Source of the DNA: Octopus bimaculoides
Lineage: Eukaryota
NCBI RefSeq assembly: GCF_001194135.2
Contig: NC_068985.1
Coordinates: forward strand, 106,334,173 to 106,371,407
Reading direction: 5' to 3'
Length of the DNA stretch: 37,235 nucleotides
The notes under the pieces: model-generated
What the model was told of the DNA's origin: nothing
The model's input: only the letters and a program-made list of their open reading frames with translations
The model's database searches: none
Part shown: piece by piece, positions 5,557 through 37,206 of the stretch
How positions within the stretch are numbered: the stretch's first letter is position 1
Layout of the letters: every line of letters starts with the position of its first letter
Program-made: the position numbers and the translations under genes

Positions 5557-5889
5557 AAAAGAAATAAACAGAAGAGGGAGATGGGGACAAATGGAATAAT
5601 CAAAGCTTGAATGCTTTTGATCCCAGAGATCTGCTTAATCTGGGGCAAAACCAGTGTTTCTCATAAGTGGTACAACTACAAAAACTTAAAAAAGAGGGCA
5701 GTTATTTAATAAAATTAAGATGGTTTCTGACGTTTTAAATTTTGTTAAACACTTTGGTTAAAAAAAGAATTACATACTTGCAAAACAAATTTTGTCATCT
5801 TATTAATAAAAATGAGGAAAGGTAGCAAAAACATTTTACATTTTGAGGAGGCTGGTATATGTTAGTTTGAGAAGCATTAAACTCTAAAT

Positions 5890-6338
5890 CAGTGGTTCTC
5901 AACCATTTTTTATCTACGGGCCCCACTGCATGTCGAGCGCCTTTGGGCGACCCTTGGTCAAGAACAGTGTCGGTTGGGGAGTTTGACTGGGGCGGTACGT
6001 CTGTCAAACGGTAACGCAGGTGTCCCAAGGCGAGCTCAGCGTGGACGGAAACCACACATCGAGCAAAAGAGCAAAAAGCTCGCTCGATCTCAATGTTCAA
6101 AAACTAGTTTTATAGATACTTCTTTCAAAATTCTTGCTTTTCACACTTTCACTTGTGTTGTTTGAACTATGTAAAACATTAAAGCTGTTTCTTGCAATAC
6201 ATACATTTAAAACATAATTTTTTCAGAGGCCCTTAATATACTATCTTGGATCCTCAATTTACTATTTTGTTGGGTGGATACCCAAAAATCTTATACAGAA
6301 CATCAGGGTTCATGTGGATCCCAGTCGAGAAACCACTG
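5890..6338 (+). mobile_element. hAT (Charlie/MER5-like) MITE with a captured 28S rRNA fragment
   Basis: TIRs CAGTGGTTCTCAAC (5890) and gtcgagaAACCACTG (ends 6338). Perfect 8-bp TSD CTCTAAAT at 5882-5889 and 6339-6346. The body matches the MITE at 23553-23884. Confidence 0.9.
5925..6090 (+). pseudogene. 28S rRNA (fragment): 28S (LSU) rRNA fragment, domain V region including the P-loop; non-functional
   Basis: acagtgtc..tggggagtttgactggggcggtac.tctgtcaaacggtaacgcaggtgtcc.aaggcgagctcag...gagcaaaag.gcaaaa(a)gctcgct.gatct matches the universally conserved animal LSU sequence. Positions 5960-6090 are clear; 5925-5959 is assigned only by exclusion from the MITE. Confidence 0.92.
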
Positions 6339-6474
6339 CTCTAAATAAACAAGCGACAGTTCAATGCAAGGGCAATAACTTGTACATACTCCCCATTTGC
6401 AAAAGAAACTACTATCGGTGAATATGTGTGGTGTCATTTTCCTTTACTCATATCAGTTCTCCTCTTCATTTCAG

Positions 6475-8969: not shown

Positions 8970-9204
8970 CAGTAGTTCTCAATCAGGGACCATATGACTC
9001 TTGGGGGTCCATGTAAAATTTTGTTGTTAAAAATCATGTGCAATAAATTAGTTCTGCAATACACAAAATATCTTAACAATTTTTTGATTTAATTATAACA
9101 ATATAATAGGATTTTTTTTTAAACATTGAATAGCTCTGATGGTCTATTCAATTAAAATTGGAATATATGGGGGTCTATAGGTAAAAAATGGTTGAGAACC
9201 TCTG
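8970..9204 (-). mobile_element. hAT MITE, related to the 5890 and 23553 family, opposite orientation
   Basis: TIR-like ends CAGTAGTTCTCAATC and aaaaaatGGTTGAGAACCTCTG. No clean TSD. Confidence 0.7.
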
Positions 9205-10965: not shown

Positions 10966-12537
10966 TCAATCTCCCGATGTCTGATGAAAATGGTCACGTA
11001 TATAGTCCGTATCGAAATATACAACAGTAACTGTAATATCATCCCTGTATAGACGTGATATATGAATTGGTAGGGTCAACATAGCAGACACACGACCATG
11101 TTCCGGTCCGAGAGCATTACGGATTAGGTGAGTAGCGGCGTTAGAATCCTCAGCTTTATTGGCCAGGCTAGTTTTTCTCTTCAGCAAGATTTGATTAATA
11201 TTCGATAAAGTGATTTCGCTATAAGGTAATCTGAAGTTGACATGGACTTGTTGCCCTTCCATGTGGCCGGCTATGATTTTTACAACTTTCTCAGGAGTGA
11301 CCATCTCCCACAGTCCGTCTGTTGCCAACACCAGAAATTTATCCTTTGGGGTGAGGCGTCGACTGATCAATTCAGGCTCGGCTGTCAGATAAGGTGGAGT
11401 GTGATAGTGGGCAGGAATTAAATTGTTTCCGTATGGGGTAGAATAAGCCATTGTTTTGACCACATGTTTCAGTTCTCTGGCCGGCCATTTATAACGTACA
11501 TCTCCGAAGGCTCTTAAGGGGGCTAAGTCGCCCAATAAGCGACCGTTTCTAATCAAATGAGTCCCTTCGTTCGGATGAGAATTCACTAGTCTTCTACATT
11601 CTTGGACATTGTCAGCGTTGTGGTCATGGGACAGTTCTTTGGCTTCCCACTGGTCATCTCCAACATTGACCCCTAAAACAGCTTTGCAATCACCAGTGTT
11701 AGCAACATACAAGTTTATACCGTCCACCATAGCAACGCAAGCACAGGAACCAGAAAAAGCTATCTGCATGGCTTCGAAGTTACTCACATTTTTGGAATAA
11801 TTCGGTAGTGCTTCTTGTACAATATCCTGATCCAGTCGACAAAATGCACTCAATAAATGATCATCAATCGTGGATTCTTCCTCAATATACAGCGCTAATA
11901 TCTCATTTGCCAGTTTAACCAAGCTTTTACTATACATCGGAGAAAGTTCTTTGTTCACATAGTCGTGTGCGCCTCGATACCAGTTTAAAATCCCAGTTGA
12001 ATGGATATCGAGCCCGCGATCCTTCAGTAAATGGACAATTTTTTCTATCAAATGTGGGGGTGAAATCATCAAAGCGATATAATAATAGAGCCTTTCACTT
12101 ATAGCTTGTGCACAAGCACAGCCTGCATGTCCATCGAAAACACCGAACAAAAATCTAGGGCTGCCGACAAACTTGGCATTTCCTCGTCGATCTTCAATAG
12201 GATTGTTGGACTGGAGTTGGTTGGATTCGAAATACTTCACCGCTCCCTCATTCACATCGACACTGAGTTCGTTGACACGAAGTATAGAAGTAACTTGCAA
12301 GGGAGCTAGACGAGGATTCTCTACACTATCGGGGCCACTAAATACAGGCCTTGATGTGTGATGGATAAATCTCTTTTGATATCTATTGTTTTGATGGAGT
12401 TTCGAGTAACTAGCAGTGCGACGGCAGTTACAGGGATTGAAACCATGTCGCATACAAAATACTGGGCATAATTTTCTGTCCGAAACTCTGCTACCAAGTT
12501 GAGTAAACCAGCTTGGAGGTAACCTTCTCATGTTCAT
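10966..12537 (-). CDS. PDP1: [Pyruvate dehydrogenase (acetyl-transferring)]-phosphatase, mitochondrial (PP2C/PPM family; PDP1/PDP2-like), single coding exon, 523 aa
   Basis: PDP-specific and PP2C motifs: SNQLQSNNPIEDRR, FGVFDGHAGCACAQAISERLYYYIA, FCRLDQDI, VANTGDCKAVLG, LSHDHNADN, RLLGDLAPLRAFGDVRYKW, TPPYLTAEPE, FLVLATDGLWE, NAATHLIRNALG, YRDDITVTVVYF. The Arg-rich, acid-poor N-terminus is consistent with a mitochondrial presequence. PDP1 versus PDP2 orthology cannot be resolved by eye. Confidence 0.97.
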   Translation of the reverse strand: MNMRRLPPSWFTQLGSRVSDRKLCPVFCMRHGFNPCNCRRTASYSKLHQNNRYQKRFIHHTSRPVFSGPDSVENPRLAPLQVTSILRVNELSVDVNEGAVKYFESNQLQSNNPIEDRRGNAKFVGSPRFLFGVFDGHAGCACAQAISERLYYYIALMISPPHLIEKIVHLLKDRGLDIHSTGILNWYRGAHDYVNKELSPMYSKSLVKLANEILALYIEEESTIDDHLLSAFCRLDQDIVQEALPNYSKNVSNFEAMQIAFSGSCACVAMVDGINLYVANTGDCKAVLGVNVGDDQWEAKELSHDHNADNVQECRRLVNSHPNEGTHLIRNGRLLGDLAPLRAFGDVRYKWPARELKHVVKTMAYSTPYGNNLIPAHYHTPPYLTAEPELISRRLTPKDKFLVLATDGLWEMVTPEKVVKIIAGHMEGQQVHVNFRLPYSEITLSNINQILLKRKTSLANKAEDSNAATHLIRNALGPEHGRVSAMLTLPIHISRLYRDDITVTVVYFDTDYIRDHFHQTSGD

Positions 12538-23552: not shown

Positions 23553-23884
23553 CATGGGTTCTCAACCATTTTTTATCTATGGATCCCTTTGAATATTATT
23601 TTATTCTGGTGGACCCTCATAGCCATTCATTGTTTAAAAACTAGTTTTTAGAAACTTCTTTCAAAATTTCGGTATTGTTTTTCTCACGTAAACTTGTGTA
23701 GGTTGAGCTATGTAAAATGTTAGAGAAAGAAGCCCAGCTGTTTCTTGCAATACATACATCTAAAGCAAAATTTTCTCAGAGGCCCTTAGAATACTATTAT
23801 GGCTCCCCAATATACTATTTTGTTCTGTGGACCCCCAAAAATCTTATATGGATCCTCAGGGGCCATATAAGCTTAGAACCACTG
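23553..23884 (+). mobile_element. hAT MITE, same family as 5890-6338 but without rRNA insert
   Basis: catGGGTTCTCAACCattttttatcta...aaaaactagtttt...cttctttcaaaatt...gctgtttcttgcaatacataca...cagaggccctta...caaaaatcttata...ttAGAACCACTG. Confidence 0.85.
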
Positions 23885-23994: not shown

Positions 23995-24299
23995 ATGACT
24001 CGGTGATTAGAGCATTGGGCTCACAATCATGAGGTAGTAAGTTCGATTCCCGGACCAGGCTGTGTGTTGTGTTCTAGAGTAAGACACTTTATTTCACGTT
24101 GCTCCAGTTCACTTATCTGTAGAAATGTGTTGCGATGTCACTGGTGCCAAGCTGTATCGGCGTTTGCCTTACCTTTAGATAACATCAGTGGCATGGAGAG
24201 GAGAGGCTTGTATGCATGGGCGATTGCTGGTCTTGTGCCTCGGAGGGGAACTTTCTAAGTGCAATCCAAAGGTCATTCATGACCGAAGAGGGTCTTTAC
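23995..24299 (+). mobile_element. tRNA-head SINE, family D
   Basis: A-box-like ggtgattagagc and B-box agttcgattccc, followed by gtgttgtgttctagagtaagacacttta, a common SINE body motif. Confidence 0.75.
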
Positions 24300-36390: not shown

Positions 36391-36703
36391 GTGGTCTGAT
36401 CAATAAGTAACCGGACTGTTGCCATAGTAATGAAGCTAAAGCACACAGAATAAAGTTGCTTGGCACAGATTGACCTTGAACTCTGCTGTGCATGCACACT
36501 AAGTTTTAACATTCTAGCTCACTTCCGCTGTTTACAGCAATGCTTGGAAGGGACGTGTGTAGTGTGTGATTGTCGCATTGACCATAACAGAGAATGCTGA
36601 GCAGAGAATTTGCGTCAAATTTTACCAAAAGTTTGGTGATACCTGCTCAGAGGCTTATAGAAACTCTTCAAACTCTTCATTGTTCCTGCTCAGAGGCCTA
36701 CAC
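36391..36703 (+). mobile_element. mariner (Tc1/mariner) left end including the TIR and the first transposase codons
   Basis: ggtctgatcaataagtaaccggactg terminus; ITENAEQRICVKFYQKFGDTCSEAY. Positions 36503-36660 are the reverse complement of 37085-37206. Confidence 0.85.
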
Positions 36704-37206
36704 AAACTCTTCATCTTTCTCAACACAATCAAGGAGATCTTGTGCAACTGAAACCAGAGTATCTTTTTGGTCAGCTAAAAGCAGTTTTGGCACAAACCTG
36801 GAAGACACACACCTCATAACCAAATCTTCAGTGATAATGAACTGAACTGAACTGAACTGAACTGTAACTAATCTGTACATCCCCTGACAACTCATGGATT
36901 GTGATTCAATGATTTTCCCCCTCACAGCTGCATGCACATTTGCAATGTTTTTCTCAGTTCTGCAGGTTGTGGGTCTCCCAGAATTTCTGTCACCATTGAC
37001 ATTTTTTCGACCATCTTGGAAACGTCTTAACCACTCGTACACTTGTGTGCGGCTCATACACTCCTCTCCATACACTTTCTGCAACTTTGTGTAGGCCTCT
37101 GAGCAGGTATCGCCATGACAACTTTCTCTGTTATGGTCAATGTGATGATCATGCACTACACAAGCACTGTTGTAAACAGCAGAAGTGAGTTAGAACATTA
37201 AAACTT
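36698..37206 (-). pseudogene. mariner transposase N-terminal fragment (paired HTH domains to the WVPHEL-equivalent linker), no DDD catalytic domain
   Basis: GDTCSEAYTKLQKVYGEECMSRTQVYEWLRRFQDGRKNV...SGRPTTCRT...EDLVMRCVSSRFVPKLL...QKDTLVSVAQDLL. An internal (ACTGA)n expansion lies at 36838-36865. Confidence 0.9.

What the first reader, a model, noticed from the sequence alone, without database searches (positions are those of the whole stretch)
5882..6346. A hAT MITE has captured a 28S rRNA P-loop fragment, with an empty sister copy in the same window
Seen: an intact MITE (TIRs, perfect CTCTAAAT TSD) carries ~165 bp of LSU rRNA. In the sister MITE (23553-23884) the same slot holds ~40 bp of ordinary MITE sequence (23588-23627), so the rRNA replaced it. 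The right junction (gatctcaatgttca) resembles both the rRNA continuation (gatcttgattttca) and the MITE (cattgttta), suggesting imperfect microhomology. One helix shows compensatory changes (gtgg/ccac where vertebrates have gagg/cctc), as expected for a real rRNA donor. Established: rRNA-derived retroposed pseudogenes and 28S-derived SINEs exist, and hAT elements make 8-bp TSDs. Inference: this is either a one-off repair capture (rDNA- or RNA-templated) or a copy of an amplified rRNA-carrying DNA-transposon subfamily, which I do not know to be described.
Basis: partly seen in the sequence, partly recalled or inferred. Interest (0 to 1): 0.78.

Follow-up and report, generated by a model that had tools for sequence, protein, structure and literature searches.

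The report
One-off 28S rRNA patch inside MITE
A small, old "cut-and-paste" transposon relic in this genome had about 35 bases of its interior replaced by about 173 bases copied from the animal's own 28S ribosomal RNA sequence; this happened once, at this locus, after the transposon had landed, so it is an ordinary DNA-repair scar and not a new kind of mobile element.

Summary
Window 5890-6338 is a 449-bp MITE with imperfect terminal inverted repeats and a perfect 8-bp target-site duplication, CTCTAAAT. It carries about 173 nt (5926-6098/6099) of eukaryotic LSU rRNA covering the P-loop region (Rfam 98.6 bits, E=3e-24). RNA and DNA reads of the same species show the donor is the host's own 28S. 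Over 113 checkable nt there are 6 substitutions and 1 indel, and 4 of the 6 are CpG decay. The GTGG/CCAC helix is the host's own.

The right junction lies in an 8-nt microhomology, TCGATGTT, shared by the MITE and the host rRNA. Thousands of family copies carry ordinary sequence in that slot. Contigs that span the junctions exactly have single-copy word depth. Junction 31-mers occur only in runs of organism A, from at least four studies, so the assembly is not chimeric.

A sister species (organism B) has the same MITE at the same locus, and its slot holds ordinary MITE sequence. The rRNA piece was therefore acquired in place, in lineage A, after insertion. This is a one-off templated ("filler") insertion at a repaired break. 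The amplified-subfamily reading is rejected. Two things stay open: whether the template was rDNA or rRNA, and whether a transposase made the break. Interest is low.

The parts
5882..5889 (.). Left target-site duplication, CTCTAAAT
   Evidence: Identical 8-mer at 6339-6346.
5890..5925 (+). MITE 5' end, with terminal inverted repeat CAGTGGTTCTCAACC. Sequence is MITE-derived up to the left junction.
   Evidence: Hundreds of family contigs match 5882-5924, with summed depth about 1000 times single copy. The organism B ortholog fits through 5925.
5926..5946 (+). First 21 nt of the insert. It fits the host rDNA (…CGCAGCCGATGC) only loosely, with 7-9 extra nt that may be a slipped duplicate of GCGACCCTTGG.
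   Evidence: Host upstream sequence comes from loose ends. Alignment. Assignment is uncertain.
5947..6099 (+). Host 28S rRNA-derived sequence in the rRNA sense, covering the P-loop (H80) region and following helices. It is decaying.
   Evidence: Rfam LSU_rRNA_eukarya 98.6 bits. Host RNA and DNA reads differ at 5956, 5960, 5975, 6058, 6070 and 6092, plus one extra A at 6073. 6000-6039 could not be checked.
6089..6099 (+). Right junction zone. The microhomology is TCGATGTT in the ancestral sequence and TCAATGTT in the window. The next letter, C, is of rRNA type, and the following A is shared.
   Evidence: MITE consensus …CATTCGATGTTT. Host rRNA …ATCTCGATGTTCA|GTACG. TCGATGTT is the longest common substring of the two.
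6100..6338 (+). MITE 3' part, including the right terminal repeat …GTCGAGAAACCACTG
   Evidence: 78% identical to copy 23627-23861. Family contigs in all runs.
6339..6346 (.). Right target-site duplication, CTCTAAAT
23553..23884 (+). Sister MITE copy without rRNA. Its slot, 23588-23626, holds ordinary MITE sequence. Its flanks GTCTAACT and GTTAACCA look like a decayed 8-bp TSD.
8970..9204 (-). Third, shorter related MITE (CAGAGGTTCTCAACC … GAGAACTACTG), also without rRNA. It has TTCAATGTTTAAAAA at the slot's right edge.

Best explanation
A non-autonomous DNA transposon (a MITE, probably of the hAT superfamily) inserted here before species A and B separated. Later, in lineage A only, a DNA break in the 5' third of this already old copy was repaired by copying foreign template.

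Inferred steps of the repair:
- One broken 3' end primed on a 28S rDNA unit, or on 28S rRNA, at a short imperfect match (GGGCCCC in the MITE against GGGCGCC in the rDNA).
- About 173 nt of 28S sequence were copied.
- The new strand re-annealed to the other side of the break through the 8-nt match TCGATGTT.
- About 27-35 nt of MITE interior were lost.

The patch has no function. It has since decayed as ordinary methylated DNA, mostly by CpG to TpG/CpA changes. It never transposed as a composite.

Shown: the host origin of the patch, replacement rather than insertion, the microhomology, single-copy status, and absence from the ortholog in B.

Inferred: the repair pathway (synthesis-dependent or microhomology-mediated templated insertion).

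My leaning, about 2:1, is that the break was unrelated to transposase. This copy already differs from the family consensus at 3 of 36 positions in its 5' end, and the two full copies in the window are only 78% alike. The family is therefore much older than the A/B split, which stands at about 4-5% flank divergence.

My leaning is also roughly 60:40 for an rDNA (DNA) template over an rRNA (RNA) template.
For: - LSU rRNA identity: (98.6 bits, E=3e-24).
- Host donor. The host rRNA and rDNA differ from the window at only 6 positions plus 1 indel in 113 nt, and the host shares GTGG/CCAC. One search shows 4 of the 6 substitutions at host CpGs.
- Replacement: the family consensus in the slot is TTTGATTACTATTTTACTCTGGTGGACCCCCATAGCCATTCGATGTTT, and sister copies in the window agree.
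- Microhomology: (TCGATGTT is the longest MITE/rRNA common substring and sits at the junction).
- Unique junctions: an exact junction contig in X8 has depth 9.38, where single copy is about 9-12. An exact junction contig in X1 has depth 61.7, where single copy is about 57. No other junction-spanning pieces at 88% or more appear in four runs.
- Real, not chimeric: junction 31-mers occur in organism A runs from at least 4 studies and in no other organism.
- In-place acquisition: the organism B contig (depth 37.6, single copy) fits flank, TSD and MITE from 5790 to 5925, then continues TTGATTACTATTTTATTACTAGCCATTCGA…, which is ordinary MITE interior.
- Precedent: filler DNA in hAT elements (PMC3014272, PMC3260210) and dispersed rDNA fragments (PMC5381670).
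Against: - Copy number rests on Logan contig depths and on which pieces the tool lists, not on a genome-wide alignment. Contigs resembling human rDNA are silently filtered, so diverged composite copies could be under-seen.
- In X21 raw reads, 4 reads were 99% or more alike on 6040-6100 where I expect about 1 for a single-copy locus (my estimate, assuming a 2-3 Gb genome). This is probably partial overlap with rDNA reads, but I did not resolve it.
- Only 30 of the 47 extra letters of organism B's contig were shown.
- The first 21 nt of the insert fit the host rDNA poorly.
- The insert's divergence from host rRNA (about 6%) exceeds half the A/B flank divergence. It fits only if CpG sites decay much faster, or if the donor was already a variant or pseudogene.
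- Neither the nature of the break nor the nature of the template is shown.
Confidence: 0.85

Rival explanations
1. The composite is one copy of an amplified, rRNA-carrying MITE subfamily. On this reading the capture came before transposition, and the perfect TSD reflects insertion of the composite.
For: The ends are intact and the TSD is perfect. A few rRNA-like contigs at unique depth exist elsewhere in the genome.
Against: Exact junction contigs have single-copy depth, and no diverged junction-spanning contigs are seen. All family loose ends at the slot are ordinary MITE sequence. The orthologous MITE in organism B has the same flank and lacks the rRNA. The other rRNA-like contigs carry host-type letters and run on as rRNA rather than MITE.
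Confidence: 0.03
2. A transposase made the break. The MITE was excised in lineage A and the gap was refilled from the sister chromatid. Synthesis switched to rDNA part-way through (abortive gap repair, as in the origin of Ds elements), which recreated both ends and the TSDs with a filler in the middle. This is a sub-variant of the best explanation.
For: The anatomy is exactly what this model predicts: both termini and TSDs intact, an internal deletion plus filler, and microhomology at the junctions. hAT elements are documented to carry filler DNA (PMC3014272, PMC3260210).
Against: The copy was already old when the patch arose. The insertion predates the A/B split. Its 5' end differs from the consensus at 3 of 36 positions, its terminal repeats are imperfect, and family copies are about 78% alike. 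An active transposase at that time is therefore doubtful. Any random break would give the same product.
Confidence: 0.3
3. The template was mature 28S rRNA, not rDNA. This would be RNA-templated break repair or reverse transcription of an abundant RNA. It is also a sub-variant of the best explanation.
For: The patch contains only mature-rRNA sequence in the sense orientation, with no spacer. rRNA is the most abundant RNA in a cell. RNA-derived templated insertions at breaks are known from mammalian and yeast work (my own knowledge, not checked here).
Against: No poly(A), no target-site duplication around the patch and no other retroposition mark. rDNA is itself a multi-copy donor that produces dispersed fragments (PMC5381670). 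A 173-nt piece internal to the 28S cannot discriminate between the two templates.
Confidence: 0.35
4. A LINE-mediated retroposed rRNA pseudogene happened to land in the MITE.
For: rRNA-derived retroposed copies and 28S-derived SINEs exist (PMC4994717). LINE remnants are plausible in this genome.
Against: There is no A-rich or microsatellite tail and no duplication flanking the patch. About 27-35 nt of target were deleted, and there is 8 nt of junction microhomology.
Confidence: 0.04
5. The feature is an assembly chimera or foreign-rRNA contamination.
For: rRNA is a common contaminant. E. coli 23S is indeed present in one RNA run.
Against: Both junctions are present as exact contigs and 31-mers in independent runs from at least four studies of organism A. 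The sequence matches the host's own rRNA, including lineage-specific helix letters.
Confidence: 0.01

Closest known systems
Filler DNA in internally rearranged hAT elements (maize Ds/Ds-like, PMC3260210; Anolis hobo non-autonomous elements, PMC3014272). The classical 'abortive gap repair' model comes from my own knowledge (Engels 1990; Rubin & Levy 1997).
   Same: Both termini and the TSD are intact. An internal segment is replaced by unrelated genomic sequence. The junctions show short homologies. The superfamily is probably the same (8-bp TSD, CAG… terminus).
   Different: The filler here is 28S rRNA sequence, and the event can be dated to after insertion by an orthologous copy without the patch. 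There is no evidence that the composite ever moved or that a transposase made the break.
Dispersed rDNA-derived pseudogene fragments or 'rDNA-like signal' (Robicheau et al. 2017, PMC5381670), annotated in many genomes as LSU-rRNA repeats
   Same: A short piece of rRNA-gene sequence lies outside the rDNA array, is non-functional, and is decaying. Other such pieces exist at unique depth in this genome.
   Different: Here both junctions, the lost target sequence and the ancestral state are resolved to the nucleotide.
Templated sequence insertions at repaired double-strand breaks, such as NUMT-type or templated insertions and polymerase-theta or SDSA template switching (my own knowledge)
   Same: A deletion plus the insertion of a copy of a distant sequence, with microhomology at the junctions and no TSD around the patch.
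   Different: At 173 nt the patch is longer than typical theta-mediated insertions. The pathway is inferred, not tested.
rDNA-derived mobile elements: SINE28 (28S-derived SINE, PMC4994717), 5S-derived SINEs and Cassandra, and Pokey with IGS repeats (review PMC10946416)
   Same: rRNA-gene sequence lies physically inside a transposable element.
   Different: Those are amplified families in which the rDNA module is part of the propagating unit. This is a single, non-propagated locus. The review's table lists no DNA transposon with 28S coding sequence, and this case does not supply a mobile one.
Pack-MULE / Pack-type transduplication
   Same: A non-autonomous DNA transposon carries a captured host fragment between its terminal repeats.
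   Different: Pack-type elements are mobilised with their cargo and occur as families. The test for that here was not met.

Membership tests
hAT-superfamily non-autonomous element (MITE) | 8-bp target-site duplication | tested here: met
   Perfect CTCTAAAT at 5882-5889 and 6339-6346. Copy B's flanks GTCTAACT and GTTAACCA fit an 8-mer with one deleted base. The third copy matches at only 5 of 8 positions.
hAT-superfamily non-autonomous element (MITE) | Short terminal inverted repeats beginning (C/T)A(G/A)NG | tested here: met
   CAGTGGTTCTCAACC against the reverse complement CAGTGGTTTCTCGAC. These are imperfect, with one indel. The motif itself is recalled from my own knowledge.
hAT-superfamily non-autonomous element (MITE) | Small, non-coding, high copy number | tested here: met
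   449 bp with the patch and about 310 bp without it. The terminal-repeat depth is about 1000 times single copy in organisms A and B, and is similarly high in organism C.
hAT-superfamily non-autonomous element (MITE) | An autonomous partner encoding a hAT transposase with the same termini | not testable with these tools
   No genome assembly of the organism can be searched. The only transposase remnant in the window is mariner-type (HTH_48 at 36698-37156).
Filler-DNA / templated insertion at a repaired break | Internal sequence is replaced while the flanks of the break are retained, and the ancestral state is known | tested here: met
   The family consensus and the organism B ortholog both have ordinary sequence in the slot.
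Filler-DNA / templated insertion at a repaired break | The donor sequence is identifiable elsewhere in the same genome | tested here: met
   The host 28S rRNA/rDNA matches, leaving 6 substitutions and 1 indel over the 113 checkable nt.
Filler-DNA / templated insertion at a repaired break | Microhomology at the junctions | tested here: met
   Right junction: 8 nt, TCGATGTT. Left junction: only an imperfect match, GGGCCCC against GGGCGCC.
Filler-DNA / templated insertion at a repaired break | Break caused by transposase excision (abortive gap repair in the strict sense) | not testable with these tools
   The sequence outcome is the same for any break. The age of the copy argues mildly against it.
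Amplified rRNA-carrying transposon subfamily (Pack-type or SINE28-like) | Several loci with the same internal junctions but different flanks and TSDs | tested here: not met
   Exact junction contigs have single-copy depth, no other junction-spanning contigs appear, and junction words occur only at this locus's depth. The ortholog in B has no patch.
LINE-mediated retroposed rRNA pseudogene | A 3' A-rich or LINE-type tail and a target-site duplication around the insert | tested here: not met
   Neither is present. Target sequence was deleted instead.
Functional LSU rRNA gene | Full-length, within an rDNA unit, identical to the expressed rRNA | tested here: not met
   Only about 173 nt, corresponding to model positions about 2584-2727 of 3401. 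It differs from the expressed rRNA by CpG-type decay.

The most novel reading that the evidence does not exclude
The patch was copied from mature 28S rRNA rather than from rDNA. That would make it a germline RNA-templated break repair fixed in a wild invertebrate lineage, with both junctions and the pre-repair state preserved. A second, weaker novel reading is that it records transposase-induced abortive gap repair and so catches the birth of a chimeric hAT MITE that failed to spread.
Probability: 0.35. Interest if true: 0.45.

Novelty: new member of a known kind. Interest (0 to 1): 0.22.

Why it matters
The case matters little beyond being a clean textbook example. It shows at nucleotide resolution, with a sister-species 'before' state, how a break in junk DNA was patched with about 173 nt of ribosomal RNA sequence through microhomology, and how such patches seed dispersed rRNA-like fragments. 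It gives annotators a practical warning. A short rRNA hit inside a transposon with perfect TSDs need not mean a mobile rRNA-carrying family, and whole-window Rfam scans can miss such pieces. The more exciting reading, a DNA-transposon subfamily spreading 28S sequence, would have been new according to the 2024 review PMC10946416. The data here do not support it.

Tried and rejected
- Whole-window Rfam scans, in both gathering and E-value modes, did not report the LSU piece. Only the focused 601-nt scan did. The mir-297, mir-466 and mir-3149 hits are microsatellite artefacts.
I worked on the two sides separately, so that 40-nt core is unchecked against host reads.
- I first read the depth of bin 5925-5941 as single-copy evidence. 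One search showed that terminal-repeat contigs ending at 5925-5928 can produce such a bin mean, so I dropped it. I now rely on the exact junction contigs and the junction 31-mers.
- Foreign or contaminant rRNA donor: rejected, because the host's own rRNA fits, including the GTGG/CCAC helix.
- I at first took the missing high-depth rDNA contigs on 6045-6086 at 88% likeness or more to mean strong divergence from the host. Relaxing the threshold to 80% showed only 3 substitutions and 1 indel.
- Organism C (X26, X27) gave no contig for the left flank at 93% or more, so it is uninformative on timing.
- ARAGORN found no tRNA in the window.
- Literature searches for a described DNA transposon carrying 28S sequence found only Pokey (IGS repeats) and SINE28.
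- I ran no further search on identifying the organism.

Full report
**What is in the sequence**

The window has CTCTAAAT at 5882-5889 and again at 6339-6346. Between them lies a 449-bp element. It starts CAGTGGTTCTCAACC and ends …GTCGAGAAACCACTG, whose reverse complement reads CAGTGGTTTCTCGAC. These are a perfect 8-bp target-site duplication and short imperfect terminal inverted repeats. The window holds two further relatives: 23553-23884 (+), 78% identical over the right 236 bp, and a shorter one at 8970-9204 (-).

A focused Rfam scan of 5800-6400 gives LSU_rRNA_eukarya at 98.6 bits, E=3e-24. The confident part of the alignment is about 5944-6090, corresponding to model positions about 2584-2727. 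This stretch holds the GGGGAGUUUGACUGGGGCGG motif. From my own knowledge of 23S/28S rRNA, that motif is the H80 P-loop region. An E. coli 23S contaminant contig in one RNA run aligned on exactly this stretch. Both whole-window Rfam scans missed the piece, so the focused scan was necessary.

**Whose rRNA it is**

Public runs that hold this locus belong to a coded 'organism A'. I laid three data sets of organism A on the two checkable halves of the patch: RNA-seq reads (X24), an RNA contig of depth 13,364 (X20) and genomic reads (X21). These give the host's own 28S sequence. Against the window it differs as follows:

| Position | Host | Window |
|---|---|---|
| 5956 | A | G |
| 5960 | G | A |
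| 5975 | C | T |
| 6058 | G | A |
| 6070 | G | A |
| 6092 | G | A |
| 6073 | — | one extra A |

That is 6 substitutions and 1 indel in 113 nt. Four of the six substitutions are host CpG to TpG/CpA changes, out of 13 host CpGs. Only 2 fall in the 87 non-CpG positions.

The donor is therefore the host, not a contaminant or a foreign genome. The copy has since decayed as ordinary, probably methylated, DNA.

Positions 6000-6039 could not be compared, because the tool refuses stretches that resemble human rDNA.

**The junctions**

The host rRNA reads …GCTCGCTCGATCTCGATGTTCA and then GTACGAATACGGACCGCGAAAGCGTGGCCC. The window follows it to 6098/6099 and then continues AAAACTAGTTTT…, which is MITE sequence.

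Hundreds of family contigs give the ordinary MITE sequence on the left of that point as …CTGGTGGACCCCCATAGCCATTCGATGTTT. MITE and rRNA thus share TCGATGTT. This is the longest common substring between the MITE 5' consensus and the known host rRNA stretch, and it sits exactly at the junction.

On the left, the family consensus is …ATCTATGGACCCCTTTGATTAC…. The window reads …ATCTACGGGCCCCA|CTGCATGTCGAGCGCCTTTGG|GCGACCC…. The host rDNA upstream of GCGACCC is …TCGCGGGCGCCGGCGCAGCCGATGC.

- The ortholog in organism B fits the window through 5925, so I place the left junction at 5925/5926.
- The microhomology there is only imperfect (GGGCCCC against GGGCGCC).
- The first 21 nt of the patch fit the host rDNA loosely, with 7-9 extra nt. 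These may be a slipped copy of GCGACCCTTGG. This part is uncertain.

**One locus or a family**

The terminal repeat occurs about 1000 times, judged by summed contig depth against single-copy depth. Every well-supported loose end at the slot is ordinary MITE sequence. Contigs that match the junctions exactly have single-copy word depth:

| Run | Contig | Window span | Depth | Single-copy depth |
|---|---|---|---|---|
| X8 | 104 bp | 5887-5990 | 9.38 | about 9-12 |
| X1 | 73 bp | 6047-6119 | 61.7 | about 57 |

No other junction-spanning piece at 88% likeness or more was listed in four runs. The other rRNA-like contigs at unique depth carry host-type letters and run on as rRNA. They are dispersed rDNA pseudogene pieces, not MITE composites.

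Sampled 31-mers across each junction are held completely only by runs of organism A:

- Left junction: X1, X3, X8, X11, X12.
- Right junction: X1, X2, X4, X5, X6, X7, X16.

These runs come from at least four studies, which also rules out a chimeric assembly. Dropouts differ between the two junctions and occur within a single sample, so they reflect sampling and not polymorphism.

I withdrew one earlier argument. I had read the depth of bin 5925-5941 as single-copy evidence, but it can be produced by bin averaging.

**The sister species**

Run X19, 'organism B', holds the orthologous flank with about 4-5% divergence. One single-copy contig (209 bp, depth 37.6) fits the window from 5790 through the TSD and the MITE end to 5925. 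It then continues for 47 nt as TTGATTACTATTTTATTACTAGCCATTCGA…. This is ordinary MITE interior with a private 15-nt deletion relative to the consensus. A second contig of B resumes at 6106.

The MITE insertion therefore predates the A/B split, and the rRNA patch arose afterwards, in place, in lineage A. About 35 nt of MITE were replaced by about 173 nt. 'Organism C' has the family in bulk but gave no contig for this flank.

**Mechanism**

The anatomy has three features: deletion of target sequence, a sense copy of a multi-copy or abundant donor, and an 8-nt microhomology on one side with a weaker one on the other. There is no tail and no duplication around the patch. This is the anatomy of a templated (filler) insertion during break repair, in which a broken 3' end primes on an ectopic template, copies it, and re-anneals by microhomology.

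It is also what abortive gap repair after transposase excision would leave, and hAT elements are known to carry filler DNA (PMC3014272, PMC3260210). I lean against a transposase-made break, about 2:1, for two reasons:

- This copy predates the A/B split and already differs from the consensus at 3 of 36 positions in its 5' end.
- Family copies are only about 78% alike.

The family looks much older than the event. Whether the template was rDNA or rRNA cannot be told from an internal 28S piece. I lean 60:40 to DNA, because rDNA is a documented source of dispersed fragments (PMC5381670) and such fragments are visible in this genome.

**Comparison with known things and verdict**

The element meets the sequence criteria of a hAT MITE: 8-bp TSD, CAGTG terminus, small size and high copy number. 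The autonomous partner could not be examined.

The event belongs with filler-DNA and templated insertions and with dispersed rDNA-derived fragments. It does not meet the defining test of an amplified rRNA-carrying family such as SINE28 (PMC4994717) or Pack-type elements. A 2024 review of rDNA inside transposable elements lists no DNA transposon with 28S coding sequence (PMC10946416). This locus does not add a mobile one.

It is a tidy example of a known process. Interest is low, at about 0.2.

Noticed in passing
window 6094-6135: The about 40-nt MITE segment aaaactagttttatagatacttctttcaaaattc has summed contig depth about 10 times that of the MITE's own terminal repeat (about 550,000 against 57,000 in X1). 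That is roughly 10,000 copies in organism A, and organism B shows a similarly strong peak at this segment. It seems to be shared with other, more abundant repeat families.
   Followed up: no
elsewhere in the genomes of organisms A and B (contigs laid on window 5947-5999 and 6040-6100): Several 0.4-1.5-kb contigs at unique depth carry pieces of this same 28S region, with CpG-decay-like changes and various breakpoints (5949, 5952, 5953, 5957, 5986, 5998…). Dispersed rDNA pseudogene fragments therefore seem fairly common in these genomes.
   Followed up: partly
window 10966-12537 (-): An uninterrupted 523-aa ORF with a PP2C phosphatase domain (Pfam PF00481, E=6e-36). By eye it looks like pyruvate-dehydrogenase-phosphatase. 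It is apparently intronless. The MITE lies about 4.6 kb downstream of its stop codon.
   Followed up: partly
window 36698-37156 (-): An ORF with the HTH_48 domain of Mos1/mariner transposases (E=2e-7). It is a mariner remnant unrelated to the MITE family studied.
   Followed up: partly
window about 10.45-10.75 kb, 28.7-29.7 kb and 34.95 kb: Assembly gaps (1355 N in all), flanked by TA/TG/CA microsatellites. The mir-297, mir-466 and mir-3149 sub-threshold Rfam hits at 12.6-13.6 kb, 29.8-29.9 kb and 31.5-32.6 kb are low-complexity artefacts of such repeats.
   Followed up: partly
window about 23995-24050: Just right of the sister MITE, the sequence …ggtgattagagcattgggctcacaatcatgaggtagtaagttcgattcc looks like a tRNA-derived (SINE-head-like) sequence. 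ARAGORN calls no tRNA in the window.
   Followed up: partly
RNA run X20, laid on window 5964-5996: A contig whose flanks read TCTAACGTTGACCCGTAATCCGGGTTGCGG … CTCCTCCTAAAGAGTAACGGAGGAGCACGA. I recognise this as enterobacterial 23S rRNA, so there is bacterial rRNA contamination in that public RNA run.
   Followed up: no
window 5800-6400 compared with the whole window: The 98.6-bit LSU rRNA match (family gathering score 50) is reported only when a short stretch is searched. The whole-window scans, in both gathering and E-value modes, drop it. Short rRNA fragments can therefore be invisible to routine window-scale Rfam scans.
   Followed up: yes
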